This document shows positions 1,795 to 27,168 of a stretch of DNA of 32,000 nt, piece by piece; the first letter of the stretch is position 1; every line of letters begins with the position of its first letter. The DNA comes from Wallemia ichthyophaga EXF-994 (taxonomy: Eukaryota; Fungi; Basidiomycota), in NCBI RefSeq assembly GCF_000400465.1, contig NW_008806275.1, forward strand, positions 692,728 through 724,727, read 5' to 3'. Made by a program: the position numbers and the translations under genes. The notes under the pieces were generated by a model, which was not told where the DNA came from, did no database searches, and saw only the letters and a list, made by a program, of their open reading frames with translations.

Positions 1795-3070
1795 TTAGTG
1801 ATGGAATCTGCGTCTGTTGTGCTGATCCCTCTTAACTTTCATTCTCTTCATTTTGTCATCGTCTACGAGTCTTCTCTGTACTTGTCCACGGCAAGATACG
1901 AATTCATCTTGACACGAGTACGCAGTACCTGGAACCCAGTCGTTGTTACATTGCGTCCATTGTGATTCACAGTCTTGTTCGGCAGTTGCTTGTTGGCCAG
2001 AGTTGTTTTTCTGGTTTGCATTGTTATTCTGCTGCCCTGAGCCTTTGTCTTGTTGAGCAGAGCCATCATTTTCGTCGGCATCGTCATAATCATTTGAATT
2101 GTTGTTGGACCCATCATTAGAGCCATTGTCAGAGTTTCCGTTGCCTTGGTTACCCTGATCTACCTGTTGAGCATGAACATTTGCAGAAGATTGAGCAGGA
2201 GCGAACTTTTTGAAGTTAGATTGTGTGGCGCTTGATGTAGAGTTATCAGAGTTATCAGAACCATCTGAAGTACCATCACCACCACCACCGGAAGCAGCAC
2301 CCTGTCCAACAGTGATAAGCTCAGGACCTGGGAATTGGTATGCTGAATCAGACTGAACGTTATAGATATCACTACCACTCGAAGCTAAACCAGCATCAGA
2401 CCAGCTGTAAGTACCTGGGAAAGTAGCCGTTGCGTCGTCGCTGTAGGTGTTTGAACCATCACCTGTGATAGTCCATGACACGCAGCGAGGGTAGTACTGT
2501 GGCCTTGAAGCATGAAGTGAAATTATCTCAGTTCTCATGAGGTAGTCACCTGTTTTTAAATGCTGTGAGACAATCTTCTAGATGAAAAATCTTCTTTTGT
2601 CACTCACCAGCTGCGAGATCCTCTGGGATAGTCACTTGGTATCCGCCACCATTCATCAATGAAGCTTGCTTCCACTGTCCGTTTTCGAAACCAACTTGAT
2701 CGATCTTGAACCATTTAGCTGAATCAGCGTTCATGTTGGCACAGTCGGTGGTACATTGTGCCATATAAGTGATTATTGGACCTGTATTGTGTGGCCACTG
2801 CTGCTGAGCTGTCTCTTCCCACCAGAGAGTCATAGTGGACCCAGCACCAATCGTAGCAACACTATTTGGTGATGAGTTTGGACCACAAAACATATCCGAT
2901 GAGTATGGGTCCTTGATTGGGTTGATACCAGAGGTCCACTCTGGTGCATTTTGTGAGGACTGATTAGGGTCAGGACCGTTGAAGCCTTGACCATTCACGT
3001 CTATGTAAGAAACCACACCGTGTGCGAGTGCTGAGCTAGCTAAAGAGAGTGCGACGAATGCGTTAACCAT
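1795..3070 (-). CDS. AA9 (GH61) lytic polysaccharide monooxygenase, paralog A, 405 aa, with long disordered C-terminal region and Cys4 module
   Basis: Signal peptide MVNAFVALSLASSALA is followed by His1. It has WPHNTGP (second His), WFKIDQ, TIPEDLAAGDYLMRTEIISLH and QYYPRC (Gln-x-Tyr). There is one phase-1 intron at 2550-2607. Confidence 0.93.
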
Positions 3071-4057
3071 TTTTACAAGACCGGCTTGTTTGAACGACTT
3101 TTGAAGAACTTGGGTTGTTGAGATGACCTAAGAGAGAACAATGACATTTACGAATTTTTCTTATTACAGGGCAGGAACGGTAAAAAACCGATGACCAGGG
3201 TAATAGCGCATGTACATACGATCGGTCAAATTGATAACAGCAATTGGTAAATTCTCATATAATCCTGCACACTTCCTACTATGCTAGTTATCTAGTTGCC
3301 ATTCCCCACTTCAAATTTGGTTACAGGGCTTGCCCGCTATTCAAGACCGGCCAACCTCCACATCGAAGAGGCGGGAAACTGCTCACTGCCTCAATATATG
3401 TTTGTAAAAAGACCCATTCAAAGATCACACTTGGAAAAGTGAGACTATGCGGACAGAGAGACACACAGTGGTGATGTCACCGATAGAAACTTTCGTGTGC
3501 GTTTGACTTTTAATTTGTATCCAAACATAGATACTAAAAATAGTACAGTCAGCTTCACTGCGCGCGTCTCAAGACAGCGGATGTTGAGAAGACCCTGGTA
3601 TTTTGAAAAGTTCCGAGATTCGCTAAATGAGCGCGTTTAAAGGGTGAGTTTAAGAATGTGAGATAAGAGTACTACATTCAAGAGCGGATAACGTAATTGT
3701 ATCGATTGCTTATTCACGGCTTCCCTGTAAGCACGGCGCAGACCTTCTAGTCGCACGTTCCTGAAACAGTCTTAAACGAGACGGCATATACATGAATAAG
3801 ACAGTTATCCAATCAAACTTAAAATCCAAAAACATCTCACCAAGTCACAAATCAAACAATACTGAAATCCAAGACGCCATATTCATGAGAAGTAATAAAG
3901 ATATAGATGCCTTATCCTGAAGGTATCTAGAAACGAAGGAAATATCTACACGATATATAAAGCGGGTAAAAAACGAAAGGTTAAAGCAAAGCATCAGAAG
4001 AATTCCATTCTCCGATCCGTTTTGGGTGAATGAACATAACCGTCTCTAAAAAGCAAT

Positions 4058-5180
4058 CTAGTGGTGGCGACGAGCGTGTTGAGCGTGCTGGTTGTGCATG
4101 TCTCTCTTGACTCTCTTGGTCGTCATTTTGGCGTTAGAGTTCAATCTTCTTTGGACAGATTGGCCACGACATTGTGCCCATTGGTCTTTGCAGGTGAAGT
4201 CAGTGCCTGGGACGTAGTCCTTGTTGCATTGAGTCCACTTAGACTCGCACTCATCCTCATTTGCTTGAGTTGCACACGATGGGTTTGAGGACGCGGTGTT
4301 TGAGTCGTCGTTGCAAGTTGATGACTCGTCTTCCTCATCAGCACCGTCATCTTGCTTATCACTGTCTGTGGATTGGGAGTCGTCGTTGCTTCTATAGGAA
4401 GCTTGACCACCTTGACCGACGGTAACAAGTGGTGGACCAGGGAACTGGTATTGTTCGTCAGAGTGTACGTTGTAGATACCACCACCGCTAATAGATAAGC
4501 CAGGGTCAGACCAGCTGTAAGTACCAGGGAAGCTACCCCAAGCGTCGTTACTGTAAGTGTTGCTGCCACCGCTACCGTAGATATGGAATGAAACACAAGA
4601 TGGGTAGTATTGTGGCTTTTGTGCGTGAAGGGAGATAATCTCAGTTCTCATGAGGTAGTCGCCTGTAGTAATCAACTGTGAGTCAATGTACTTTGAAAAG
4701 AAAAACACACCCACCCTCTTCGAGATCCCATGGGATGGTGATGGTGTAACCAGCGCTGTTCATCAAAGAAGCTTGCTTCCATTGGCCATTCTCGAAACCT
4801 TTTTGATCAATCTTGAACCAGTTTGCCGAGTCAGCGTTCATGGTCGAACAGTCACCGCTCCAGCAGCGGGCCAAGTAGGTGATAATTGGACCCGTGTTAT
4901 GTGGCCATTGTGAGTATTGCGTCTCCTCCCAGTAGATGTTCATGGAAGAGCCAGCTCCGATGTAGCCTTTGCCATTGGCGTAAGCGTTTGGACCGCAGAA
5001 CATGTCTGGTGAGTATGGGTCCTTGATAGGGTTGATACCAGCGGTCCATTCGGCAGCGCCAGGAGACGCTTGGTTTGGCTCTGGACCATTGAAGCCTTGG
5101 CCTTCAACGTTAATGTACGACACGATACCGTGAGCGAGTGCAGAGCTAGCTAACGAGAGTGCGGCAACTGTCTTAAACAT
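4058..5180 (-). CDS. AA9 (GH61) lytic polysaccharide monooxygenase, paralog B, 356 aa
   Basis: Signal peptide MFKTVAALSLASSALA is followed by His1, then WPHNTGP, WFKIDQ, GDYLMRTEIISLH and QYYPSC. The phase-1 intron at 4663-4714 is at the same position as in paralog A. The true ATG is at 5180; the ORF track start at 5243 is an upstream non-ATG codon. Confidence 0.93.
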
Positions 5181-5254: not shown

Positions 5255-6005
5255 CGTAAAATTTGTAGGGTTACACTGGCGGACGGCACTAAACGTCACT
5301 TAGTAGTTTTAAGCGTGTGAGGACAAGCACCGCTATAATAAACGCGTATATAAATAAGGTTGACTTACTTTTGGGATAATTCGTGGAGTGCCTATTGAAG
5401 GGGGCTAGCTTTACGTGACATGTTCGAGACCTGGCGATGACGAGGAGACGTTCTCTAACATCTATTTTTGTTTTCAAGGGCAGCTCAGAGCACAAACGAG
5501 TGCGTTATGGGAAATTTGTGCATTTCATACATGTCATCAGTTGAAGTGGTGTTTTGAGGCTGTGATTGGTATATACGCACGTGCTTAGAAGCCATGTAGC
5601 TAGAGCCACGAGTATATTTGCATTTAAGCGTGTTTTGAAACTATTCCACACAGCTTCATTGGTGGATGTAGACAGCTGTGCGCTGTACCAGAGACCTTAT
5701 TAAGCGGACGATAAGAGCTTCGAAAGGGAGCGACGAGTAGAGCGCGCAATTTATCGCCCCCACTGACACCCGCAAAGTCAAAATCACTTGCCCACAATTG
5801 ATGACTCAAGAAGGCTGCGCCGGAGACTGAAAACTTTAACAGTCGTCTAGCGTCAAAAGAGAAAAGAGAGCACAGACGAAGTTCTCAGTCTTTTTGTAGT
5901 ACCACTCACCTGAAATTGCAAAATTAATTTTAAAATCTCTGACCAGCAGTTACTCTGATCCAAGATTTTGGATTTTCCCGACCACGACCTTGGAAATTGG
6001 ATAAA

Positions 6006-7730
6006 ATGAGCATGAACAGTAAAGATATAGATAAATTAGAAGCGTCGTCTTCAGAAGAGGAGGAGGAGATAAAGGAGAAATATGATAGCCACAGTCGGCC
6101 GTCATCTTCCAACAGCACGACGCCGGCGAATCCAGCGAGTGCGAATCCTACAAAGTCGCACAATCACGGCAGCACATCGCCAACGACGCCACGCCTGCCG
6201 AGCAGCTTAGCAGCGAAAATGGCAGCGATGGTGAATAGAGGCAGAGTATCGAAAGAAAGAGACACTGGCAGCACGAGCAGCGGTGGTAATGTGAGCAACA
6301 TGCAATCGAAAGGTGGCCAGCCAGTGGGAGCTGGGCTTCGGAGCATGCGTCAAGCGCCCCTCCCGCCGAACCAGCTGCGTGAGAAGATGGAAGCCATGTC
6401 AATGAATGACAAGGTGGAAGTGGAGAGGTCATCTCCACAGCAGAAAACAGCAGCAACGCCCTCACCCCCTGGTGGACTCGCAGCGAGACGGGGTATGAAA
6501 CTTAGCATGAACAACAACCCCGCGCCACCAGCAGGCAACACACCCAAAAAGCGTGGCCCGCCTGGAAAGCTGAACCTCAGCAACGATGACGGCAAGCACG
6601 ATACCCCTTTCTCCAAATTCTCAGACATCGTTGACCCTTCTGGTAAACTCAATTTCGGAGAAGGGAAGGCAGTGCTGCATGCATCAGGAGTCAACTTTTC
6701 CACCGGGCACTCATTTAATATTAAAATCGAAGATCTAGAACTGCAGGAGGAGCTTGGCAGGGGAGCGTACGGAGGGGTGCGCAAAGCCAAGCACAGATCG
6801 ACAGGCGTGGTGATGGCAATTAAGGAGATACAATTAGAACTAGACAAGAGTAAACTCGCAGGTATTGCTATGGAATTGGATATCCTTCATCGCGCAGTCA
6901 AGCCCCAGATAGTTGAGTTTTACGGTGCATTCTTCGTCGAAGGCTGTATTTTTTACTGCATGGAGTTCATGGATGCGGGATCGCTCGATAAACTCTACTC
7001 GCCTACATTCGGTGTACCCGAGGATATCCTAGCGTTTGTGACGAAGAATCTGATCATTGGATTACAATTCCTCAAAGATGATCTGCAGATTATACACAGA
7101 GGTGGGTGTGTGTTGATTTGGTTGACTGGATTCTAACACTTCTTCCAGACGTCAAACCCACAAACGTGCTAATCAACAGACGCGGTAAAGTCAAGATATG
7201 TGATTTCGGTGTATCGGGACAACTCGAGAAGTCACTAGCCAAGACCAACATAGGATGTCAATCGTACATGGCAGTGAGTGGGAGATATACGCATGTTTAC
7301 ACCTTACTAACAGAATACATAGCCAGAAAGAATACAGTCACCAGAAAGTGGTGTGCACGCCTCGTTTTACACTGTAAGCTCCGACGTTTGGAGTCTAGGA
7401 TTAACAATGGTGGAGTGTTCGCGCGGTGAATACCCATACTCTTTCTCGAATGTCCTCGCGCAACTGCAGGAGATAGTCAAAGGACCAGCGCCCGAACTGC
7501 CAGCTACATACTCGGAAACGGCAAAGGACTTTATACACTCGACGCTGCGCAAGGACCCGAACGCGCGACCACAATACCAGGAATTACTGGAACATCCCTT
7601 CCTTGCATATGACAAAGAGCCAGATGTGTTTAGGTGGATTGAAGACGCACTGAGGGCTAAGAACGGCGGCAACTTGCCAGATTCGATACCAGAGTCTGAA
7701 CCTAGTCATCATTATGAGAGGTCGCATTAG
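6006..7730 (+). CDS. PBS2: HOG-pathway MAP kinase kinase (Pbs2/Wis1 type), 542 aa
   Basis: Kinase motifs GRGAYG, VMAIKEI, IIHRDVKPTN and [27 protein letters not shown]; the SLAKT activation loop is typical of Pbs2/Wis1. Introns are at 7102-7148 and 7274-7322. The N-terminus is disordered and carries basic docking-like motifs. Confidence 0.93.
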
Positions 7731-7786
7731 AGTGGTATTAATTGACATGTGTAATTTTGATTCTATTTCTTTTATGTTGTGGGTTG

Positions 7787-8632
7787 ATGAATGGCGTTGA
7801 TGGGGTGATCGACCGGTGGACCGAGTATCAGTGGAAAATAAGAGAAAGAGCTGTGTATGAGGATGAGGATGGGGATAATAATGAGGGCAATTATAATGCT
7901 ACAGATACAAACGAATTCAGTCCCGTCGTGCATCACCTACCACAGCGCGCACTCGATGTAAAAACAGAAATAGTTGGAGGAATAGACATAACACCCGCCT
8001 CGTCATCGCATGACGAATGCATAGTAACGATAGTTGTTCTATCCGTCCACGCCCAGCGCGTGCTCTACACGTATCACGAGGCGCACGCAATCAGCGAACC
8101 GTACGTTCCTTCGTATCTAGCGATGCGGGAGAGCGGGCCAATACGCAGGGCGTACACCAACTTCACAGCGCACACGCTCAATCCGATGCACACACCCGCC
8201 GTGTGGCTGATAGACGGCAATGGCAGGCTTCACGAGAGGGAAGCAGGACTAGCTACGCAGGTTGGCGTCGAGCTCGGTATAAGGACGGTGGGGGTGACTA
8301 AGAATTACTATCCAATGACCCATTTCCACGGTGCACTCAGCCATCCCAAGCTGTTTAAAGGGCTGGCTCAACAACTACTCAATAGGCGCGGCGATTGGAT
8401 TGGGTTGCCTGGCGCGTCTGAGAATGCTTCTGCTAACACCTACATCGGCGCTGCTCTCCTCACCGGACGCAATGCTACCAATCCAGTCTTCGTGTCAGCG
8501 GGTCATAGATGTTCATTGCAATTCGCCCTAAGTGTCACATACGCTCTCTCTAAACACCGCATTCCTTTGCCAATTGCCCTTGCTGATAAGGCGGGCAGGC
8601 AGTATATGCGAGAACACAGCTACCACTGCTAA
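7787..8632 (+). CDS. ENDOV: Endonuclease V (inosine-specific nuclease), intronless, 281 aa
   Basis: Motifs VGGIDIT, PYVPSYLAMRE (wedge plus catalytic Glu), WLIDGNGRLH, GLATQVG...TVGVTKN, PVFVSAGH and RIPLPIALAD. All four acidic catalytic positions are present. The first in-frame ATG is at 7787. Confidence 0.9.
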   Translation: MNGVDGVIDRWTEYQWKIRERAVYEDEDGDNNEGNYNATDTNEFSPVVHHLPQRALDVKTEIVGGIDITPASSSHDECIVTIVVLSVHAQRVLYTYHEAHAISEPYVPSYLAMRESGPIRRAYTNFTAHTLNPMHTPAVWLIDGNGRLHEREAGLATQVGVELGIRTVGVTKNYYPMTHFHGALSHPKLFKGLAQQLLNRRGDWIGLPGASENASANTYIGAALLTGRNATNPVFVSAGHRCSLQFALSVTYALSKHRIPLPIALADKAGRQYMREHSYHC

Positions 8633-8787: not shown

Positions 8788-10565
8788 TTACTTGGCAAGC
8801 TTGGGACCAGCGTTGATGACAGCCTGGGAAAGACCTTGGGCATACTTGTCGAAAGCACCGTTAAAGAGACCGCCAAGCTTGTTAATCTCCTTGTCAAGTG
8901 CAGCAGTGTCCTTCCATGCTTTCGATGGGTTGAGAAGCTCTGAAGGCACGCCTTCGATGCTCTTTGGAATCTGGAGGTTGAAGATGGAGAAAGGCTCGAA
9001 TTCACTCTTGCCCAAGCTGCCGTCGTGGATGGCGTTGATGATAGCACGAGTGTACTTCAATGGACACCTCTTGCCAACACCAAACTTACCACCAACCCAA
9101 CCAGTGTTGATCAACCAGCAGTTAGTGTTGGCTTTGTTCATCCTCTCTGCCAACATCTTGGCATATCTACCTGGATGCAATACGATGAATGGCTGACCGT
9201 AGCAAGTGGAGAATGTTGGTGATGGCTCCAAAATACCATCCTCAGTTCCAGGCGTCTTGGAGGTGTAACCTGCAATAAAGTGGTATTGGGCTTGCTCTTC
9301 GGTGAGTTTGCTGACTGGTGGTAAAACACCATAAGCATCACAAGTCAACATGATGATATTTGATGGTTGATTTCTACTCAGGCAAGGTATTTTGGCGTTC
9401 TCAATGTACTCGATTGGATAAGCGCATCTAGTGTTCTCGGTGATCATGACATCTTCATAGTTTGGTTCGCGTGTACGAGAATCATAGACGACGTTTTCTA
9501 AAACAGAGCCAAATTTGATAGCGTTGTAGATTTCAGGCTCCTTCTCTTTAGAGAGACCGATAGTCTTGGCGTAACAGCCACCTTCGATGTTGAAGACACC
9601 GTTATCAGCCCAAACGTGTTCATCGTCACCGATAAGTTTGCGTTGGGGGTCTGCAGAGAGAGTGGTCTTGCCTGTACCACTCAAACCGAAGAAGAGAGTG
9701 ACGTCACCTTTCTCACCCTCGTTGGCGGAAGAGTGCAAAGACAATTGACCAAATTTGACTGGTTGGAGATAGTGCATGACAGAGAAGATACCCTTCTTCA
9801 TTTCACCAGCGTATTCGGTACCTAGGATAACCATTTCCATACGCTTGAAGTTAATTTCAACCGAGGTGGCGGAAGTCATACCGGCAGTGAATCTGTTGGC
9901 TGGGAATTGACCAGCGTTGTAGATGGTAAAGTCAGGTTCGCCCCAATTGTCCAATTCCTCTTTGGATGGTCTGATAAGCATATTCTGCATGAAGAGAGCA
10001 TGGTATGCTCTAGCACAGATGACTCTAACTTTGATTCTGTACTTTGGATCCCAGCCAGCGAAAGCGTCAACGACGTAAACATCATCGCGTGTGTTGAGGT
10101 AATCGATGGCACTGAGTGGGAGTATGAGATCATAGAAGAATGATAAAGACGTCTACTCACCGTTCGCGATTAATTTCAAAAACATGCTCAGGCATTCTGA
10201 TATTCACAGGGCCCCACCAGATATCGTCCATAGAGGTCTCTTCAAAGACGATACGCTTGTCGCGGGGACTGCGGCCAGTCTTCTTACCAGAGAAGTTGAT
10301 GAGAGCGCCGTTGGAGGAAATAACAGCGCCTTCTTTCTGGACAGCGTCTTCGTAGAGCTGAGCGACGGCAGAGTTACGCTGAGGGTGGGGTAAGATGGGT
10401 GAAATGGACGGGTAGCCATCAACTCACCTTCACATGAATTCTATCCACTTCAAAACCAGCGTCTGAGAGAGAATGCAATTCATTTGGGAGAGCTGTGATT
10501 GGTTAGAATGGACTAGCCTGTATGAATCCCAACACACTAAGAAATTGCTGCTTATTTAAAGACAT
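8788..10565 (-). CDS. PCK1: Phosphoenolpyruvate carboxykinase (ATP), 544 aa
   Basis: Motifs [45 protein letters not shown] (P-loop), LIGDDEH and NTRCAYP. Introns are at 10493-10537, 10379-10427 and 10112-10160. Confidence 0.97.
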
Positions 10566-19060: not shown

Positions 19061-19914
19061 TTACAAAGCAGTACCCCTTTCGAATGACTCGCGTATTTCC
19101 CTGTAAAATGAGGTTGTTAGCATGGTGATATAGACGTCACTAATAAAACAAACTTTGTATACTGATTAAAGTACCTGTTGATCTTGTTATTGAAAACCTT
19201 ATTACGATCATTGATATAAGTCTTGTCTTCCTCCTTCTCTGGTCTCTTTCTTGAAAAGTTCTTACGACGATGAATGTCGTCATTGACTTTGTTTGTCAAT
19301 TTATCCAAATCTTCATCTGTTGGCTTGTGATCAGCATATATCAGGCTATCAGCCTCTCTATAAAGATCCACGGTTGATGATTTATCTGCATTAGATGAAT
19401 CATCTGTGATTGTACCAGGTGGCAAACCAAGTGCCTGCTCTTTCTGTTTATTGTAGGTTGCCATATTTGGTTTAATGTATGCAAGATCCTTCTTATAACG
19501 GCGCTGGCTGACTTGTTCAGCGTCTGAGTAGCTTTATAAGCCACAAATAACCTAGACAAGGAGAGAACGCACCATCAAATTCAAACCTCGCATTCCTTGC
19601 TTTCTGCTTGAGTTTCTTCTCCCAATTTTCATTATCCTCAATGGAATAATCCATATTCTTGGATCTTTCAACATCCTCACCTTCCTCAACGACTCTCTTC
19701 TTCTCCTGAATAGCATCTGCAAGCTTCTCCTTCTTTTCCAACTTGTGAGCCACTCTTACTTGATTTTTTGAAGTATTATGCTCATCGTGTACAGCAGCTC
19801 TGTTATCTGTTGATGACTTTTGCTGTGAAATGTGAATTTATGATAAAACGAATTGAATACACCAACCATACGCTGCCTCAATTCTTGTAATTTGTTTTCT
19901 CTATCGTTGCTCAT
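19061..19914 (-). CDS. SYF2: Pre-mRNA splicing factor Syf2, 235 aa
   Basis: YSIEDNENWEKK...RRYKKDL...KPNMATYNKQK...YINDRNKVFNNKINRYFNQYTKEIRESFERGTAL, with the family C-terminal signature. Introns are at 19823-19866, 19524-19572 and 19101-19153. Confidence 0.93.
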
Positions 19915-19962
19915 GGTGGTTATGGTAAACGGATTAAATGGGTTAAACTCAAACCACCATGA
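19911..19962. repeat. Perfect 11-bp inverted repeat containing both divergent start codons
   Basis: TCATGGTGGTT (19911-19921) and AACCACCATGA (19952-19962) are separated by a 30-nt spacer. Confidence 0.85.
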
Positions 19963-22900
19963 ATGGCTTAAATGGCTTGAATGGTTCCGAAGTGGACAAC
20001 AATCCAAACACAGCAGAATCTACAGATGCAAATAATTTAGACTTAAATAATGCAGATGCTAGCTCACCATCTCCACCACCACCCACAACCACTACCCACA
20101 AATCCCACCAATCAAATTTATCTATCACTAGCCTCGGTTCAAACCCTTCAACCATGCTTTTAAGCTCATCTCTCGATACCCTGGCTAACACGAAAGATGG
20201 AAAGAAGTCTCCACTACGTGAATCGATAGCTAAAGCCAAAGAAAGTTTAAACAGTGCAAATCCCAATTTGATAGAAATATTTGAACCACTTAGTCAAGGT
20301 TGCTACTCCAAATCAACTTTAGCGACTTCAATTGACGCAATTTCAAAGTTGGTCGGTAGCAGCTTATTTAGAAATGTTAGTAGCTTAGCAGATAAGATTA
20401 CAATGACTGTCTGTGATTGTTACTCGAACAACAACTCCCTCGATGATCACATTATCCTTCAAATTGTCAAGGCTCTTCTAGCAATTGTACTTTACAACAA
20501 CCCAACTGGTCTCATTCACCACTCCACTCTTCTCACTGCTATTAGAACTGTGCACGATATCTTCAAATTTAGTAAGGATCAGGGCAATCAGATGATTGCG
20601 CAGGCTGGTTTGACTCAGATGGTTAACGCTGTATTTTCACGTCTCAAAAACGCATTCCCTGCTGAATCTCCTCAATTCCATAAAACCTCAATTAGTTCAA
20701 ATCCAATTTCTACTAGCTTTTCACAAGAAGACCACTCCAAGCCTATCGATCAAAATTCTACAGAGGAAAACCTCGAAAACATCGAAAACTTCGAGCAACT
20801 TGAAAACTCGAATGACGACGAAAAACCTCAACTTCCTTCGGCAACTGAACAAATGACCCTCAGTACCTTTGAAGGAAGGAGATCCTTCGACGCAACCCCA
20901 GCCAATCAAATATCTGACCCTCTCAACCCTCCAGATGAGGATGTTTCAGACGAAGAGCTCCTCACAAAGGATGCTTTCTTAGTCTTCAGAGCTCTATGCA
21001 AGCTCAACATGAAATCTCTTCACAAGGATAGTGAAAAGGAGATTCGCTCACCGGATTTCAGATCCAGATTGCTCAGTTTACATCTCATCAAAACCATTCT
21101 CAACACCCATATTAATGTCCTCCTTGACAACAGGATTGTTTTACACAGTTCAAACTCAGATGAGCCTACTCAACTCTTCAACGCTGTCAAACAATACCTT
21201 TGTTTGAGTTTGTCGAGAAACGCTCCAAGCTCCATACCACAGCTTTTCGAGTTGTGTTGTCAGATCTTTTCTAGAATTCTAGAAAGCATGCGCATGAACA
21301 TGAAGCGTGAGATCGAGGTGATACTTCGCGAGATTTTCCTCCCAATCTTGGAACTCAAAGAGAGCTCATCCAATAAGCAAAAAACTATCCTCTGCTCAAC
21401 AATTCTCAAGAATCTTTGTCAAAACCCACAAGCCATTGTTGAGCTTTACTTGAATTACGATTGTGACAAACATAGTCTGGAAAATATCTACGAGCACTTG
21501 ATGAATGCTCTCTCCAAAGTCGCATCGGCACACCTTCCACCAGGTCCAAAGGAGGCTGTTGGTACGAGCACATCTGAGGCTCTATCTAGCTTTTTTAAAC
21601 CATCAAAAAGTGAACTCCCTCCAAGCTTAAACACTGATGCTCTCACACCCCCGCCCGACGCCAGTCCTATCACTGCTACTTTCTCAAATCAAGCCGCAGT
21701 ACAAGCACACATTTTAGATGTTGCCGTTAAGAGACAAGCGTTGGATTTGATTAGAGGTGTACTTAGCAGCCTCGTATCATGGGCTGAACGTGGTGCTCTA
21801 CCTGTTGCTGCCGTCTCCGAAGAGGCTCCACAGTCACAGGAAGGTGAGTTTTATTTACTTGAATCATTCAACTCGGTTTACACCCTAAGTAGCATCTCCA
21901 CCCGTGGGCGTTGCAGAGTTTTCCAATGCAATTCCAACACCGGACATCGCAAACACGTTTGATTTTACCAATGCAGACGATCCAACACAATTCGAGAGCG
22001 CAAAGGCACGCAAAAACGCTCTGGTCGAGGGTATAAAGGGTTTCAACTTTAAGCCTAAAAAAGGTGTATCATTTCTCCTCGAACACGGCTTTATCAACTC
22101 CAACAAACCGCAAGATATCGCTTACTTCCTCTTAACAACTGAAGGTCTCAACAAGGCTCAGATTGGTGAGTATCTTGGTGAGGGTGAAGAGGAGAATATT
22201 GCCATCATGCATGCATTCGTCGATGCAATGAACTTTAACGAGATGTCCTTTGTTACAGCTTTAAGAGCATTCCTGCAAGCATTCAGACTACCAGGAGAGA
22301 GTCAAAAAATTGACAGATATATGCTCAAATTTGCGGAAAGATACGTCCAGCACAACCCATCAACAGTCTTTGCCAATGCCGACACAGCCTATGTGATGGC
22401 ATATTCTGTCATTCTTCTCAATACTGATGCTTATAATCCACAAAATAAGCGTAGAATGACCAAAGAAGAGTTTATCAAGAACAACAGGGGTATCAACGAC
22501 GGCAGCGACCTTCCTGAAGACTATCTGATTCAAGTATACGATGATATACACTCGGACGAGATTAGAATGAAGGATGAAATGCATCTCCACAACGCCCCTC
22601 CACCACCCAACAGCAACATAGTCAATGTCCTAAGCGGTGCCGACAAGAGCTATCAAAGGGAGCAAAATTCAATGCGCTCCGAGGGTATGGCTAATAAGAC
22701 TGAAGCACTTTTTAAATCCATGTTAAGAGCCCAACGTCGCAGTGGTATCAAGAATAGCGAGACTTACTTTAGTGCATCGCACTATGAGCACGTCAAACCA
22801 ATGTTTGAAGTAGCTTGGATGGCTATTCTTTCAGCAATGTCTGGTCCCCTTCAAGATAGCGATGATAACGAGACTGTTGTGATTTGTTTGCAAGGTTTCG

Positions 22901-25500
22901 CGAGTGCAATTAAGATTTCTTGTCTCTTTGATTTGGAGTTGGAGCGCAACGCGTTCGTTACTATGTTGGCAAAATTCACTCACCTCAACAATCTTGCTGA
23001 AATGAAACCAAAACATGTAGACGCTGTGAAGGTGTTGCTTGAGGTGGCGATGCATGAAGGCAACTATTTGAAGGGCAGTTGGAAGGAAATTTTAGGTTGC
23101 GTTAGTCAGCTTGAGCGTTTCCATCTGATTAGCAATGGTGTTGATCTAAGTGCCGAAAATAATGACGTTGGTGGACGACCAAGATCTGGCAGCACTACGC
23201 GCAAGTCTTCAAACATCCCACGTCATCTAGTCCCCGCCGAATCTGTCGCTGCAGACGGTAGAGCTTTGCAGGTTACCGGTCGCGGTGATATGGTGTTTGC
23301 AGCAACTCAAATGCTTTCGGGTGATGCCATGGTCGACTTTTCACAAGCTCTGGCGGAGGTATCGTGGGCGGAGATTCAGCAATCTGGCAGTCAACAGCAT
23401 CCACGTCTCTTCAGTTTGCAAAAACTGGTTGATATTTGCTACTACAATATGAATCGTATACGTTTGGAGTGGAGCAAGATTTGGTTAATCTTGGGAGACC
23501 ACATGAATAAGGTAGGATTTCAGTGCAAATTGCGTACCTTCTAACAAATGTAACAGGTCTGTTGCCATCCCAATCCATCCGTTAGCTTCTTCGCTATCGA
23601 TGCATTGAGACAGCTTGCGATGCGCTTTCTTGAGAAGGAGGAGCTTGCCCACTTCAAGTTCCAGAAAGACTTTTTGAAGCCATTCGAACATACCATGATC
23701 CACAATCCGAACGTAGATGCAAAAGATATTGTGGGTTGAAACGGCATACTTGGACTATTATCAAGCTGACCCAATTCAGGTCCTACGTTGTCTTCAACAA
23801 ATGCTCCAGGCACGCTCAGTCAATATACGCTCCGGTTGGAGGACACTATTTGCCGTATTTGCAGCAGCTGCCAAATCCTCAAGCGAGAGAATATGCTTAC
23901 ACGCATTCGATATCGTTTCCAGTATAGAGAAGGAGCATCTCGGCTACTTGATCAAGTTTGGATCATTCAGTGACCTCTCAGTGTGTATTACGGATTTCTG
24001 CAAAGTTCCATTCCAGCGGGTCAGTCTGCAAGCCATGCAGCTGCTTCGCTCAACCATCAACTCAATGCTGACAGCGCCAGAGTGTCCCCTTAGCAGAGGC
24101 GACGTTGGATTCTCTCAATCAGGCGACCAGCACCAACCACCCGCAGACGACCCAATGGTGATATTTTGGTACCCTATGCTCTTCAGTTTCTACGATATCG
24201 TCATGAACGGTGAGGATCTTGAGGTGAGAAACATTGCACTTGACTCGCTCTTTTCTACATTGAAGATTCACGGTTCTTCATTCCGCGTCGACTTCTGGGA
24301 TACAGTCTGTCAGAAGATTTTATTTCCTATTTTCTCAGTCTTGAAATCGCCCGTTGATTTGAGTAGATTTAACACACACGAAGATATGACAGTTTGGTTG
24401 TCGACAACCATGGTACAAGCCTTGCGTGATATGATCGATCTTTACACTCATTACTTTTATATATTGGAGAGCAAGATGGAAGGTTTATTGGAGCTTCTGA
24501 GAGCATGCATTTGCCAAGGTGGGTGTGGTGTTTCGAGATGGGTAGTTCCTGCTGATATATTGCACCATTAGAAAACGACACGCTTGCTCGTATTGGTTCA
24601 TCTTGTTTACAGGCATTGATTGAAAGCAATGCTGACAAAATGAGCGAAGAGCGCTGGGAGACGCTTACTACAATGTTTACCACACTTTTCCAAAACACAC
24701 TCGCTAGCGAGCTGTTCAATGAGTCATTGAGACAAGGTTTGGATATAGCTGACCAGCCACCAGCTGAGCCAAGTACGTGAGACTGCTTTTGAGAAGGTTA
24801 TAACTGACGCATATTAGATCAAAGTGGATTCACTCTACCACTCCCACTAGCATCACCTTCAATTGAAGAAGGAACGGTATTGAAATCTACAGAAAGACGC
24901 ACACTCTTTAAGCAAATTATCACAAAATGCGTACTGCAATTGCTACTCATTGACACAATCAGAGAATTGCTTTTCAACGACAAGGTTTACATATCTATAC
25001 CACCAGCCCAACTGCTCCGATTTGTTCAACTTCTCGATGAAAGCTATAGATTTGCGAATGCTTTCAACAATAATCAGGATCTCAGAATGGGGTTATGGAA
25101 GGTAGGTTTTATGAAGCAGCTTCCAAATCTCCTTAAGCAGGAGAGCAGTAGCGCATCTACACTCATTACACTGCTCATCAAAATGTACAAAGATACCCGT
25201 CAACAACACGTTGACCGTAGACAAGACATATCAGAGGCTTTGATTCCATTCGGGTTGAGTGTTATTGATGGCTTCAATGAACTCGACTTTGAAACTAAGC
25301 AAAGAAACATCGCGGCGTGGACACCAGTGGTTGCCGAAATCATTTCTGGTGTTTGCTACTTTGAAGATGAAGACTTTGACAAATATCTGTCAAAGGTGTA
25401 CGCACCAATCACTGATATTTTGACAAAAGACATGGGCGCAGAAGTGAGGGAAAGTTTGCGCAAGTTCTTTACCAGAGTTGGTAGAGCAAAGGTCGTTTGA
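19959..25500 (+). CDS. SEC7: Large Arf guanine-nucleotide exchange factor Sec7/BIG, about 1766 aa
   Basis: DCB and HUS regions (IVELYLNYDC), a Sec7 domain with FRLPGESQKIDR (catalytic Glu finger) and ADTAYVMAYSVILLNTD, and HDS regions. Introns are at 21844-21892, 23512-23556, 23731-23779, 24519-24571 and 24773-24817. The start could alternatively be Met at 20154. Confidence 0.95.
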
Positions 25501-25644: not shown

Positions 25645-27168
25645 CTAGGTTTGCGTATCCACACATTCCTCTCTGAGGCTGTAAAACTCCTCTCTAAAAG
25701 CATCTATCTTGGCTTTTGCGTAGAGAAGGTACTCAAAGTCATCCCCTCCGCTCTCCTCCGGTGTCTCTTCGTCACTTGAACTCTCGTCATCGAGTACGAC
25801 AGCTGAAGTCTTTTCTTCGAGATTCACCGCCATATCAGCGCCGGCGGAGGTATTTAAACTAGGCACAGTTGTTCCAAACTTACTGCCCATCGCTTTCACC
25901 TGATCTCTGGACTGCACTATTGCCCAGATACCCCACATAGCTAAACTGGCAGGAGACCACGTCTTGCGCTCATCCTCTAGTCTCTCTATCCAACCGGGTT
26001 GCTTTTCAGATTCGCTCATGTACGCCTCGTAAAACGCTCGTCTGTCTTGATAAGATGGGTAGCTGAGGATAGGCTTCCATGAGAGCGTATCGTGGTGGTA
26101 GTCGTACCTATTGAGCGAGTTAGTTAGTTGTATAGTTTGGTAATCCTAAGCCCACCTCCACTCTGTAAAATGATTCGCTAAATCATATCCGCGGGCATTT
26201 GGGGCTGCATATTCAAAGTCTATAACACATATCTTATGATGACTTGGTTTGTCTACTGGCTTGCGATCTAAGAGGAGGATGTTACCAGGCTGAGTGTCAT
26301 TGTGACAAAACACCAAGGGTGATGGTTTCACTTCCTCCTCAAACTCCCTCAAGTAATCTTCGTAGGCATTGAATTCCTGGATTAGAAGTGGTAGATTGAT
26401 ATCTTCTACCAAGTTGTAGTAGGGGTGGTTTTGTGGGAACTTTACTCGGGACATTCTCTTTAAAACGACAGAAGCTGGCGTGAGCCATGATGAGATGTTA
26501 TCCCACACGCCATATCTTGTTGAGCGTTCGTTGTATCCGGGGGCGACTGGGCCAACTACATCCATCTTCCTGAGATCAACCTGATGAAGCTCTTTCATGC
26601 GCTTAGCAATGTCTATTTTCAGGTCAGAGCGTATATCATCCTTTGAGCAGGGACGACTGCTGAACCACTCTTCAACCCTGCCATTGGCAAAGGTACCGTA
26701 GATCTTTGGACCAAGGTTGTAGTGCCTGGAGAGAGTATTGAGGATGTGCATTTCTCGAGGGCGCGAAATGAGCAAAGTGGAAGAGGGGCCGTACACACGC
26801 AAGAGAACGGTCGGAGCATCATCGTAGCTGACAAAGAAGATGGAGTTTGTGAGTGCGCCTGTTATGCGCTGGATCTGAATATCGGATGGATCGATATCTT
26901 TATCGTGCCATCCCTCAACGGAGAGGTCGTCGCAGAGGAGTTGCTGTACTTTCCTCAAGAAAGAAAGCTTGTTATATTTTTTAGCGTTTAAATATACCTT
27001 TGGCGAGTGCCTGAGCTCGTGTAACTCAGAGAGTGCTGACTCCACCAGACCGCTGTCCTCTTCCTCGTAGACGGATTGCAGCGAGGATGAGAACAAGTTC
27101 AACGCCTGGCTGTAATTTGTGGATGGAATTTTAGCGGAACAGTCTGCGCTATTGTAAACCAAGAACAT
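25645..27168 (-). CDS. Choline/ethanolamine kinase, 491 aa
   Basis: ITGALTNSIF, VLLRVYG, GTFANGRVEEW, Brenner motif VFCHNDTQPGNIL and IDFEYAAPNARGYDLANHFTEW. The intron is at 26108-26155. Confidence 0.92.

What the first reader, a model, noticed from the sequence alone, without database searches (positions are those of the whole stretch)
1891..1971. Conserved C-x6-C-x11-C-x6-C mini-domain behind the LPMO linker
Seen: A has CESQWTQCNNDWVPGTAYSCQDEFVSCRGQVQRRL and B (4169-4249) has CESKWTQCNKDYVPGTDFTCKDQWAQCRGQSVQRRL. The Cys spacing is identical, four aromatic positions and VPGT are kept, and the flanking linkers differ about two-fold in length. Established: this is not the CBM1 or CBM18 Cys pattern. 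Inference: a disulfide-stapled helical hairpin under purifying selection that may act as a new carbohydrate- or wall-binding or dimerisation module. The downstream RR/KR sites would leave it as the C-terminus of the mature enzyme.
Basis: partly seen in the sequence, partly recalled or inferred. Interest (0 to 1): 0.7.

Follow-up and report, generated by a model that had tools for sequence, protein, structure and literature searches.

The report
CBM104-like hairpin module on LPMOs
Two neighbouring cellulose-oxidising enzyme genes of the salt-loving fungus Wallemia ichthyophaga end in a small conserved four-cysteine helical hairpin plus a basic tail, built like the recently described cellulose-binding module CBM104, so it is most likely a divergent relative of a known kind of substrate anchor.

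Summary
Window 1971..1891 and 4249..4169 encode C-x6-C-x11-C-x6-C at the C-terminal end of two tandem AA9 LPMO genes of Wallemia ichthyophaga. Gene A is 405/405 identical to EOR04231.1. Each protein reads signal peptide, AA9 domain, acidic low-complexity linker, four-Cys module, Arg/Lys/His-rich tail. Between the paralogues, the module and the tail are about as constrained as the catalytic domain (pN 0.23 and 0.26 against 0.17); the linker is not (0.50). AlphaFold2 predicts a helix-loop-helix with one Cys pair on each helix (pLDDT 72 and 79). The module also occurs in other Wallemia AA9s, in Agaricales AA9s (Lentinula, Collybiopsis, Flagelloscypha) and once behind a DPBB domain.

The closest known thing is CBM104 (Kojima et al. 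2025). It has the same position, the same enzyme partner, C-x6-C-x12-C-x6-C, two disulfide-bridged helices and an Arg-rich tail, and it binds native crystalline cellulose. Sequence similarity to published CBM104s is weak: BLAST finds nothing, HMM scores stay at or below 9.6 bits, and hhalign gives at most 5% probability. Family membership is therefore not shown.

My verdict is a new variant of a known kind. The "new module" claim is overstated. The Kex2-trimming idea is untested, and tail conservation argues against a disposable tail.

The parts
1795..3070 (-). Gene A: AA9 LPMO, 405 aa. Exon 1 is 3070..2608, the intron is 2607..2550 (GTGAGT...CAG), exon 2 is 2549..1795 and the stop is 1797..1795.
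   Evidence: Splice model. The protein is 405/405 identical to W. ichthyophaga EXF-994 EOR04231.1. Pfam AA9 PF03443 matches at E 3.7e-49, aa 17-218.
2293..3022 (-). Gene A catalytic AA9 domain (about aa 17-240, spanning the intron). His1 follows the signal peptide ...SSALA|HG. It also carries WPHNTGP and LHASRPQYYPRC.
1972..2292 (-). Gene A linker: acidic, Asn/Gln/Ser/Gly/Asp-rich, low complexity, about 107 aa.
   Evidence: 17 D+E against 4 K+R. pN against B is 0.50.
1891..1971 (-). Gene A four-Cys module CESQWTQCNNDWVPGTAYSCQDEFVSC (aa 348-374).
   Evidence: AF2 gives helix 2-17, loop and a helix from residue 26 in the 64-aa construct, pLDDT 72.
1798..1890 (-). Gene A basic tail RGQVQRRLVDDDKMKRMKVKRDQHNRRRFHH (aa 375-405).
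   Evidence: 12 K+R and 3 H of 31. pN is 0.26.
4058..5180 (-). Gene B: AA9 LPMO, 356 aa. Exon 1 is 5180..4715, the intron is 4714..4663, exon 2 is 4662..4058 and the stop is 4060..4058.
   Evidence: The protein is 354/356 identical to W. ichthyophaga E3P91_00155 (P0003). Pfam AA9 matches at E 1.4e-45.
4418..5132 (-). Gene B catalytic AA9 domain (about aa 17-237, spanning the intron).
4250..4417 (-). Gene B linker: acidic, about 56 aa. It carries two extra Cys, at C1-22 and C1-9.
4169..4249 (-). Gene B four-Cys module CESKWTQCNKDYVPGTDFTCKDQWAQC (aa 294-320).
   Evidence: AF2 gives helix 2-16, loop 17-25 and helix 26-68 in the 69-aa construct, pLDDT 78.9.
4061..4168 (-). Gene B basic tail RGQSVQRRLNSNAKMTTKRVKRDMHNQHAQHARRHH (aa 321-356).
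   Evidence: 10 K+R and 5 H of 36.

Best explanation
Each of the two tandem genes encodes a secreted copper-dependent AA9 lytic polysaccharide monooxygenase. Its C-terminal region has three parts. The first is a flexible acidic linker. The second is a roughly 27-residue helix-loop-helix in which each helix carries two Cys seven residues apart; these most likely pair C1-C4 and C2-C3 and staple the hairpin (inferred). The third is an Arg/Lys/His-rich tail that continues helix 2. I read the hairpin as a CBM104-type polysaccharide-binding module, either a distant relative of CBM104 or a sister family. It would keep the LPMO on its insoluble substrate, which raises productive oxidation and limits self-inactivation. 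The ligand is most likely crystalline cellulose, by analogy (inferred). The aromatics at C1+4 and C3+4 should face the inter-helix core (helix geometry, inferred). The loop W/Y-V-P-G-x-x-Y/F offers two exposed aromatics as a candidate contact surface (inferred). The basic tail is a separate, widespread AA9 end-motif, of the X283 / GtLPMO9D kind. It probably tunes adsorption electrostatically or binds metal. Shown here: the sequence, its conservation, the selection on it, the predicted helices, its distribution and its domain partners. Not shown: the disulfide pairing, the ligand and any processing.
For: Architecture: signal peptide, AA9, linker, four Cys, basic tail in both genes.
Selection: the module and tail have pN 0.23 and 0.26, the linker 0.50, with pS saturated.
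Structure: two independent AF2 runs give helix(C1,C2)-loop-helix(C3,C4) at pLDDT 72 and 78.9.
Distribution: the four Cys are invariant across Wallemia ichthyophaga, W. hederae, W. mellicola, Lentinula spp., Collybiopsis luxurians and Flagelloscypha.
Mobility: the same module sits behind a DPBB domain in P0025 (PF03330 at E 0.002; PDB 5ntb at 1.5e-9 and 9ce9 at 4.6e-5). A module that moves between catalytic domains is typical CBM behaviour.
Published CBM104: it lies at the C-terminus of AA9, AA8, AA16 or GH131 behind a linker, with four Cys (C304, 311, 324, 331), two helices bridged by two disulfides and an Arg-rich flexible tail. It binds cellulose I but not PASC, and binding is lost when the disulfides are missing (PMC12678898, PMC5086550 supplement).
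Register: in a global profile alignment all four Cys, the aromatic at C1+4 and a Pro at C2+6 line up with CBM104. The score is 11.9 against 3.8 +/- 2.7 for column shuffles, with 2 of 200 shuffles reaching it. Cross-family HMM scores exceed composition shuffles for most members.
Against: Sequence similarity to CBM104 is not significant by the usual standards. BLASTP finds no alignment at E <= 100. The CBM104 HMM gives at most 9.6 bits, and the window's own two copies score no better than shuffles. hhalign probability is 0.8-4.8%. An exhaustive profile search of 1.84 billion representatives found no canonical CBM104 protein at E < 1e-3. The third conserved CBM104 aromatic (Y337) has no counterpart, and helix 2 has a different consensus (CQ[TD]E[FY]V.C against C.AT[KR]D.C). 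No model coordinates were available, so the Cys-Cys distances were not checked. W. ichthyophaga is an obligate halophile and not a wood decayer (my own knowledge), so cellulose may not be the ligand. Most members of gene B's orthogroup carry a fifth Cys just upstream, which would fit intermolecular bonding.
Confidence: 0.55

Rival explanations
1. The module binds the fungus's own cell wall (beta-glucan or chitin), or anchors the LPMO there for wall remodelling, rather than binding plant cellulose.
For: AA9s are reported as developmentally regulated and are proposed to remodel fungal walls (PMC10282164). A Cryptococcus LPMO is needed for wall integrity (PMC10166503, listed). Wallemia is a xerophile/halophile with a thick wall and little plant-biomass lifestyle (my own knowledge). 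The helix-2 consensus differs from CBM104, so the specificity may differ.
Against: The only assayed modules of this architecture bind cellulose I. The other carriers are wood or litter Agaricales AA9s and a DPBB (expansin/loosenin-like) protein, which points to plant walls.
Confidence: 0.2
2. [quoted passage not shown]
For: CoAA9A dimerises through one Cys that is preceded by acidic and followed by basic residues (PMC10990093). The same charge pattern holds here: EDE-C ... C-RGQSVQRRL. PcoAA14A dimerises via Cu and a Cys, with His in the tail (bioRxiv 10.1101/2025.11.04.686606). Gene B's orthogroup has an extra Cys at C1-9..-11. The tails are His-rich.
Against: The four invariant Cys form an even number. 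They sit at i and i+7 on two predicted antiparallel helices, which is the geometry of intramolecular stapling. Gene A and two other clades have no fifth Cys. The module is conserved well beyond the Cys: W/Y at C1+4, an aromatic at C3+4 and the VPG loop.
Confidence: 0.13
3. One reading: Kex2-type cleavage at RR/KR removes the tail. The hairpin becomes the mature C-terminus, and the released basic peptide may itself be active, for example antimicrobial.
For: Dibasic sites are conserved: QRR-L, and KR-D/S in all Wallemia copies. K/R-R-D also occurs in Schizophyllum and Cylindrobasidium CBM104 tails (AKRDKFGRLLL). A basic LPMO tail peptide was reported to be antifungal.
Against: Residues after the sites are conserved (pN 0.26). 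The H.RRHH-type end recurs in Agaricales, and a hairpin-less Wallemia AA9 keeps a basic RHA.RE tail. AF2 places the sites inside a continuous helix. Published work treats CBM104 tails as present and as affecting adsorption in proteins made in Komagataella. There are no proteomic data here.
Confidence: 0.1
4. The pattern is only residual similarity between recent paralogues and has no function of its own.
For: A and B are tandem duplicates.
Against: Synonymous sites are saturated, while the module stays at pN 0.23 and the adjacent linker has diverged to 0.50 and changed length two-fold. The module is kept across two subphyla and on a different N-terminal domain.
Confidence: 0.02

Closest known systems
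CBM104 (C-terminal domain of Gloeophyllum trabeum GtLPMO9A-2; Kojima et al., Carbohydr Polym 2025; J Appl Glycosci 2025 PMC12678898; first noted in the PMC5086550 supplement)
   Same: It lies at the C-terminal end behind a low-complexity linker, mostly on AA9. It has four conserved Cys as C-x6-C-loop-C-x6-C, and two predicted alpha-helices each carrying a Cys pair. It has an aromatic at C1+4, a Pro at C2+6 and an aromatic just before C3. It is followed by an Arg/Lys-rich tail that often contains K/R-R-D. It also occurs on non-AA9 partners.
   Different: There is no significant sequence similarity: BLAST finds nothing, HMM scores are at most 9.6 bits and hhalign gives at most 4.8%. The loop is 11-12 residues in Wallemia and 15-24 in the other members (19-24 in the Agaricales AA9s, 15 in the unassigned P0025), against 12 in GtCBM104. 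Helix 2 reads CQ[TD]E[FY]V.C, with an aromatic at C3+4, in place of C.AT[KR]D.C. The third conserved CBM104 aromatic is missing. The tails are His-rich. It occurs in Wallemiomycotina and in Omphalotaceae and Niaceae. CBM104 was reported from Agaricales (genera named: Armillaria, Guyanagaster, Schizophyllum, Auriculariopsis, Cylindrobasidium), Gloeophyllales and Russulales. Ligand binding is untested.
CAZy X283 motif with a preceding Cys (CoAA9A, Colletotrichum orbiculare; PMC10990093)
   Same: It is the end-piece of an AA9 C-terminal region. Acidic residues precede the Cys and a positively charged tail with an R.HAR-like motif follows. B ends ...HAQHARRHH, and the paralogue clade has ...RHAR...
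   Different: X283 regions are disordered and have one Cys, which forms an intermolecular disulfide. Here four Cys sit in a predicted folded hairpin.
GtLPMO9D-type basic tail (P+H-phi-SR-phi-M++; PMC5086550 supplement)
   Same: It is a basic, probably helical terminal motif on basidiomycete AA9s. It is seen in many weaker hits to gene A (P0012, P0015-P0020, P0040). The Agaricales hairpin proteins end with the similar KHLRRHHAGVSRLEFH.
   Different: It has a single Cys and no hairpin.
CBM1 (fungal cellulose-binding domain)
   Same: It is a small, four-Cys, aromatic-bearing module at the end of a linker on fungal cellulose-active enzymes.
   Different: CBM1 is a beta-strand cystine wedge with a different Cys spacing. 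There is no Pfam CBM_1 match at E <= 10.
Disulfide-stapled helical hairpins in general (twin CX9C/CHCH proteins, plant alpha-hairpinins with CX3C...CX3C); from my own knowledge, not tested
   Same: Two antiparallel helices are pinned by two disulfides formed from paired Cys motifs.
   Different: The spacing differs (CX6C), and so do the cellular compartment and the sequence families. Foldseek against the PDB found nothing better than E = 6.

Membership tests
CBM104 | Small (about 50-60 aa) module at the C-terminus, behind a low-complexity linker, on AA9 (also AA8, AA16, GH131) | tested here: met
.
CBM104 | Four conserved Cys in the arrangement C-x6-C-x12-C-x6-C | tested here: met
   Both C-x6-C pairs are invariant in 18 sequences. 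The central loop is 11 residues in A and B, 12 in one Wallemia paralogue clade, and 15-24 in the other members (19-24 in the Agaricales AA9s, 15 in the unassigned P0025). Published CBM104 relatives also vary in loop length.
CBM104 | Two alpha-helices, each carrying one Cys pair (predicted structure) | tested here: met
   AF2 for A gives H2-17 and H26-61 at pLDDT 72. AF2 for B gives H2-16 and H26-68 at pLDDT 78.9.
CBM104 | Two intramolecular disulfides bridging the helices | not testable with these tools
The pairing is inferred from the i/i+7 spacing on antiparallel helices.
CBM104 | Three conserved aromatics (Y308, W321, Y337 in GtLPMO9A-2) | tested here: inconclusive
   An aromatic at C1+4 is present (W/Y). 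An aromatic before C3 is present but one position closer to the Cys. There is no counterpart of Y337. Extra aromatics occur at C2+4 and C3+4.
CBM104 | Arg/Lys-rich flexible C-terminal tail | tested here: met
   The tail has 10-12 K+R and 3-5 H in 31-36 residues. AF2 models it as a helix rather than as flexible.
CBM104 | Significant sequence similarity to GtCBM104 (BLAST E < 1e-3 was the criterion in PMC12678898) | tested here: not met
   BLASTP finds no alignment at E <= 100. The HMM gives at most 9.6 bits, and A and B score at shuffle level. hhalign probability is 0.8-4.8%. No canonical CBM104 was recovered.
CBM104 | Specific adsorption to native crystalline cellulose I, not to PASC | not testable with these tools
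   This needs a binding assay.
CAZy X283 end-motif with dimerising Cys | Positively charged short motif R-X-H-A-R at the end of a disordered AA9 C-terminal region | tested here: inconclusive
   B has QHARRHH. P0005, P0006 and P0023 have RHAR. A has HNRRRFHH. No X283 profile was available.
CAZy X283 end-motif with dimerising Cys | A single conserved Cys before the motif that forms an intermolecular disulfide | tested here: not met
   Four invariant Cys lie in a predicted hairpin. An extra upstream Cys occurs only in gene B's orthogroup.
AA9 LPMO (the carrier enzyme) | Pfam AA9 domain; N-terminal His after the signal peptide; second His (WPH); H...Q.Y motif | tested here: met
   PF03443 matches at E 3.7e-49 and 1.4e-45. 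The residues are read directly from the sequences.
CBM1 / CBM18 | Match to the family profile and Cys pattern | tested here: not met
   No such Pfam match at E <= 10.

The most novel reading that the evidence does not exclude
The Wallemia/Omphalotaceae/Niaceae hairpin is a separate, so far undescribed CBM family, or a deep CBM104 subfamily. It would share only the twin-CX6C helical-hairpin design with CBM104 and have its own ligand, for example fungal-wall glucan or chitin, or a different cellulose face. It would work together with a conserved His/Arg end-motif that binds copper or mediates dimerisation. It would also date back to before the split of Wallemiomycotina and Agaricomycotina.
Probability: 0.3. 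Interest if true: 0.55.

Novelty: new variant of a known kind. Interest (0 to 1): 0.4.

Why it matters
LPMO C-terminal regions are only now being recognised as functional, as shown by CBM104, X283 dimerisation and the copper-binding AA14 tails. This module would extend the two-helix, two-disulfide anchor design beyond the three Agaricomycete orders where BLAST found it. It would add a second basidiomycete subphylum, a halophile with very few plant-biomass enzymes, and a DPBB/expansin-like partner. The module is diverged enough that comparing it with CBM104 could show which positions carry binding and which only build the scaffold. It is a small module that is easy to express, and it may serve as a tag specific for a cellulose or cell-wall surface. 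It is not a new principle.

Tried and rejected
1. Plus-strand reading of the given coordinates gave nonsense; the genes are on the minus strand.
2. A word-indexed homologue search with the two modules alone found no candidates, although an identical protein is in the database. This is a limit of that index for short queries.
3. Pfam scans of the module and tail gave only sub-threshold noise: Conotoxin, DUF7784 and others.
4. X282 was considered and rejected. It is a Ser/Thr-rich belt that directly follows the AA9 domain, with no Cys.
5. PDB searches by fold and by sequence profile found no relative.
6. Direct tests of CBM104 membership gave only weak signals. They were above shuffle controls but far below family-assignment level.
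7. The third regex hit, at 19411-19482 (+), is a chance match in a non-coding frame.
8. Supplements of PMC12678898 with the 144 CBM104 sequences are not held, so only ten published sequences from PMC5086550 could be used.

Full report
**Observation.** The coordinates are right, but the coding strand is minus; the plus-strand translations are meaningless. Reading the minus strand gives two tandem genes, each with one intron at the same place. Gene A is 3070..2608 plus 2549..1795 and encodes 405 aa. Gene B is 5180..4715 plus 4662..4058 and encodes 356 aa. The spliced product of A is 405/405 identical to Wallemia ichthyophaga EXF-994 EOR04231.1. The product of B is 354/356 identical to W. ichthyophaga E3P91_00155. 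The window is therefore W. ichthyophaga (Basidiomycota, Wallemiomycotina), and the gene models are sound.

Positions 1971..1891 encode CESQWTQCNNDWVPGTAYSCQDEFVSC. Positions 4249..4169 encode CESKWTQCNKDYVPGTDFTCKDQWAQC. A six-frame scan for the Cys pattern finds only these two sites and one chance hit. Shuffled windows give 0.145 matches on average.

**Anatomy.** Both proteins read: signal peptide, AA9 LPMO domain, linker, four-Cys segment, tail. The AA9 domain matches Pfam PF03443 at E 3.7e-49 and 1.4e-45 and carries His1, WPH and H...Q.Y. The linker is acidic and of low complexity: about 107-117 aa in A and 56-61 aa in B, with 16-17 D+E against 2-4 K+R. The tail has 31-36 residues, of which 10-12 are K or R and 3-5 are H, and it ends in HH. 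No Pfam family matches the module or tail, which rules out CBM_1 and the hevein/CBM18 model.

**Selection.** Between A and B, synonymous sites are saturated (pS 0.67-0.9). Non-synonymous divergence is 0.17 in the AA9 domain, 0.50 in the alignable part of the linker, 0.23 in the Cys module and 0.26 in the tail. The module and the tail are thus held almost as tightly as the enzyme, and the linker is free to drift.

**Structure.** Two AlphaFold2 runs gave the same picture. The first used A with 9 sequences and reached pLDDT 72. The second used B with 13 sequences and reached pLDDT 78.9. In both, helix 1 covers C1 and C2, a loop of about 8-9 residues follows (W/Y-V-P-G-T-x-Y/F), and helix 2 covers C3 and C4 and runs on into the tail.

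Cys at i and i+7 lie on one helix face. An antiparallel hairpin would therefore be stapled C1-C4 and C2-C3. This is an inference, because no coordinates were available. By the same geometry the conserved aromatics at C1+4 and C3+4 point into the mini-core, while the two loop aromatics are exposed. Foldseek against the PDB and a sequence-profile search of the PDB found nothing.

**Distribution.** A full-length search and a profile search retrieved the module in four groups of proteins:
- W. hederae and W. mellicola AA9s.
- A third W. ichthyophaga AA9 clade (P0022; CNNQYEQCLQAYVPGSGDFDCQTQFVSC).
- Agaricales AA9s from six Lentinula species, Collybiopsis luxurians and Flagelloscypha.
- One transcript-like Logan contig (P0025) in which the module follows a double-psi beta-barrel domain (PDB 5ntb at 1.5e-9, 9ce9 at 4.6e-5) instead of AA9.

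The exhaustive search of 1.84 billion representatives gave only eight hits at E < 1e-3, so this is a small family at that sensitivity. The best non-Wallemia matches to the catalytic domain of A are exactly the Agaricales proteins that carry the module: 45-47% identity, against 35-39% for AA9s without it. Enzyme and module therefore seem to have travelled together.

In the Agaricales members the C2-C3 loop is 19-24 residues. A Ser/Ala spacer of 10-50 residues separates the hairpin from a conserved end, RAFAKHLRRHHAGVSRLEFH. A fourth Wallemia AA9 (P0042/P0043) has no linker and no hairpin, yet ends in KRSARR..RHA.RE. The hairpin and the basic, His-containing end-motif are therefore separable elements.

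**What is known.** Four published items bear on this.
- *X282* is a Ser/Thr belt and is unrelated.
- *X283* is a basic R-X-H-A-R motif at the end of disordered AA9 tails. It is preceded by one Cys, which makes a disulfide dimer in CoAA9A. That Cys is flanked by acidic residues before it and basic residues after it, as here.
- *The PcoAA14A tail* binds copper through His, dimerises through a Cys, and its basic end is antifungal.
- *CBM104* is the closest match, and its description is almost the architecture seen here. Kojima et al. noted in 2016 that the roughly 55-residue C-terminal domain of GtLPMO9A-2 has four conserved Cys (304, 311, 324, 331, that is C-x6-C-x12-C-x6-C), three conserved aromatics and a basic end. 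In 2025 it became CBM104. Two helices are bridged by two disulfides and followed by an Arg-rich flexible tail. It is appended to AA9, AA8, AA16 or GH131. It binds native crystalline cellulose I but not PASC, and it is inactive when the disulfides are absent. It was reported from 39 Agaricomycete species of Agaricales, Gloeophyllales and Russulales.

**Is it a CBM104?** I took ten published CBM104 sequences from the PMC5086550 supplement and compared them with the sequences found here.
- BLASTP of GtCBM104 against A or B gives no alignment at E <= 100.
- An HMM of the ten scores the modules at no more than 9.6 bits. A and B themselves score at shuffle level. The P0005/P0022/P0023 clade and the Agaricales members exceed nearly all composition shuffles.
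- The reverse HMM behaves likewise.
- hhalign gives 0.8% probability with the first alignments. With core alignments it gives 4.8% and P = 0.008.
- In global mode all four Cys, the aromatic at C1+4 and Pro at C2+6 align in register. The score is 11.9 against 3.8 +/- 2.7 for column-shuffled controls, with 2 of 200 shuffles reaching it.

There is therefore a weak, above-chance resemblance that rests mostly on the scaffold positions. It is not enough for family assignment. Helix 2 and the third aromatic differ. The design is the same and the position is the same. A distant common origin is plausible, but membership is not demonstrated.

**Mechanism.** I commit to the hairpin being a CBM104-type polysaccharide-binding module that tethers the LPMO to an insoluble substrate. 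I put about 0.55 on binding some polysaccharide, with cellulose the leading candidate, and the fungal wall as the main alternative. The basic, His-containing tail is a second element that modulates adsorption or binds metal.

KR-D/S is indeed conserved, even in Schizophyllum CBM104 tails. But conservation downstream of the sites argues that the tail matters.

**Verdict.** It is a new variant of a kind that has been described since 2016 and was named in 2025. It is not a new kind of module.

Noticed in passing
window 4250-4417 (-), gene B linker; also P0002, P0004, P0008, P0011: There is an extra Cys 9-11 residues upstream of C1 in gene B's orthogroup. B has two, at C1-22 and C1-9. Gene A and the other clades have none. 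An odd Cys next to the hairpin could form an intermolecular disulfide, like CoAA9A Cys266.
   Followed up: partly
P0009, P0024, P0035-P0039, P0026 (Agaricales relatives): The AA9 domains that carry the module in Lentinula, Collybiopsis and Flagelloscypha read L-A-S/L...E-N/M-F-P-A/S-C where Wallemia A and B have L-H...Q-Y-Y-P-x-C. The second-sphere His and Gln and the axial Tyr appear to be replaced, so these may be atypical LPMOs.
   Followed up: no
P0042 / P0043 (Wallemia mellicola, W. ichthyophaga; not in the window): A fourth Wallemia AA9 type lacks both the linker and the hairpin but ends in a basic KRSARR..RHA.RE tail. The basic end-motif is therefore independent of the hairpin.
   Followed up: partly
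L001 130-1197 (Logan ERR13147926), protein P0025: An intronless, transcript-like contig encodes a DPBB (RlpA/expansin/papain-inhibitor-like) domain, a long Ser/Thr linker, the same four-Cys module and a basic tail. The organism is unknown.
   Followed up: partly
window 1795-5180 (-): A and B are head-to-tail tandem paralogues about 1 kb apart, with the intron in the same codon position. A's linker is twice as long and unusually Asn/Gln/Asp-rich rather than Ser/Thr-rich.
   Followed up: partly
PMC5086550 supplement Fig. S3 against window tails: A K/R-R-D dibasic site recurs in the tails of Schizophyllum and Cylindrobasidium CBM104s (AKRDKFGRLLL) and of Wallemia A and B (VKRD). This may be a shared processing or recognition site.
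   Followed up: no
window 5997-7730 (+), 7742-8632 (+), 8788-9990 (-), 19959-24571 (+), 26146-27168 (-): The neighbouring genes are ordinary housekeeping genes: a split protein-kinase gene, endonuclease V, PEP carboxykinase, a large Sec7-family GEF (DCB, HUS, Sec7, HDS) and choline/ethanolamine kinase. There is no CAZyme cluster around the two LPMOs.
   Followed up: partly
window 19411-19482 (+): A third match to the Cys-spacing regex (CTRWQTKCLLFLFIVGCHIWFNVC) lies in an unrelated frame. It is a chance match.
   Followed up: yes
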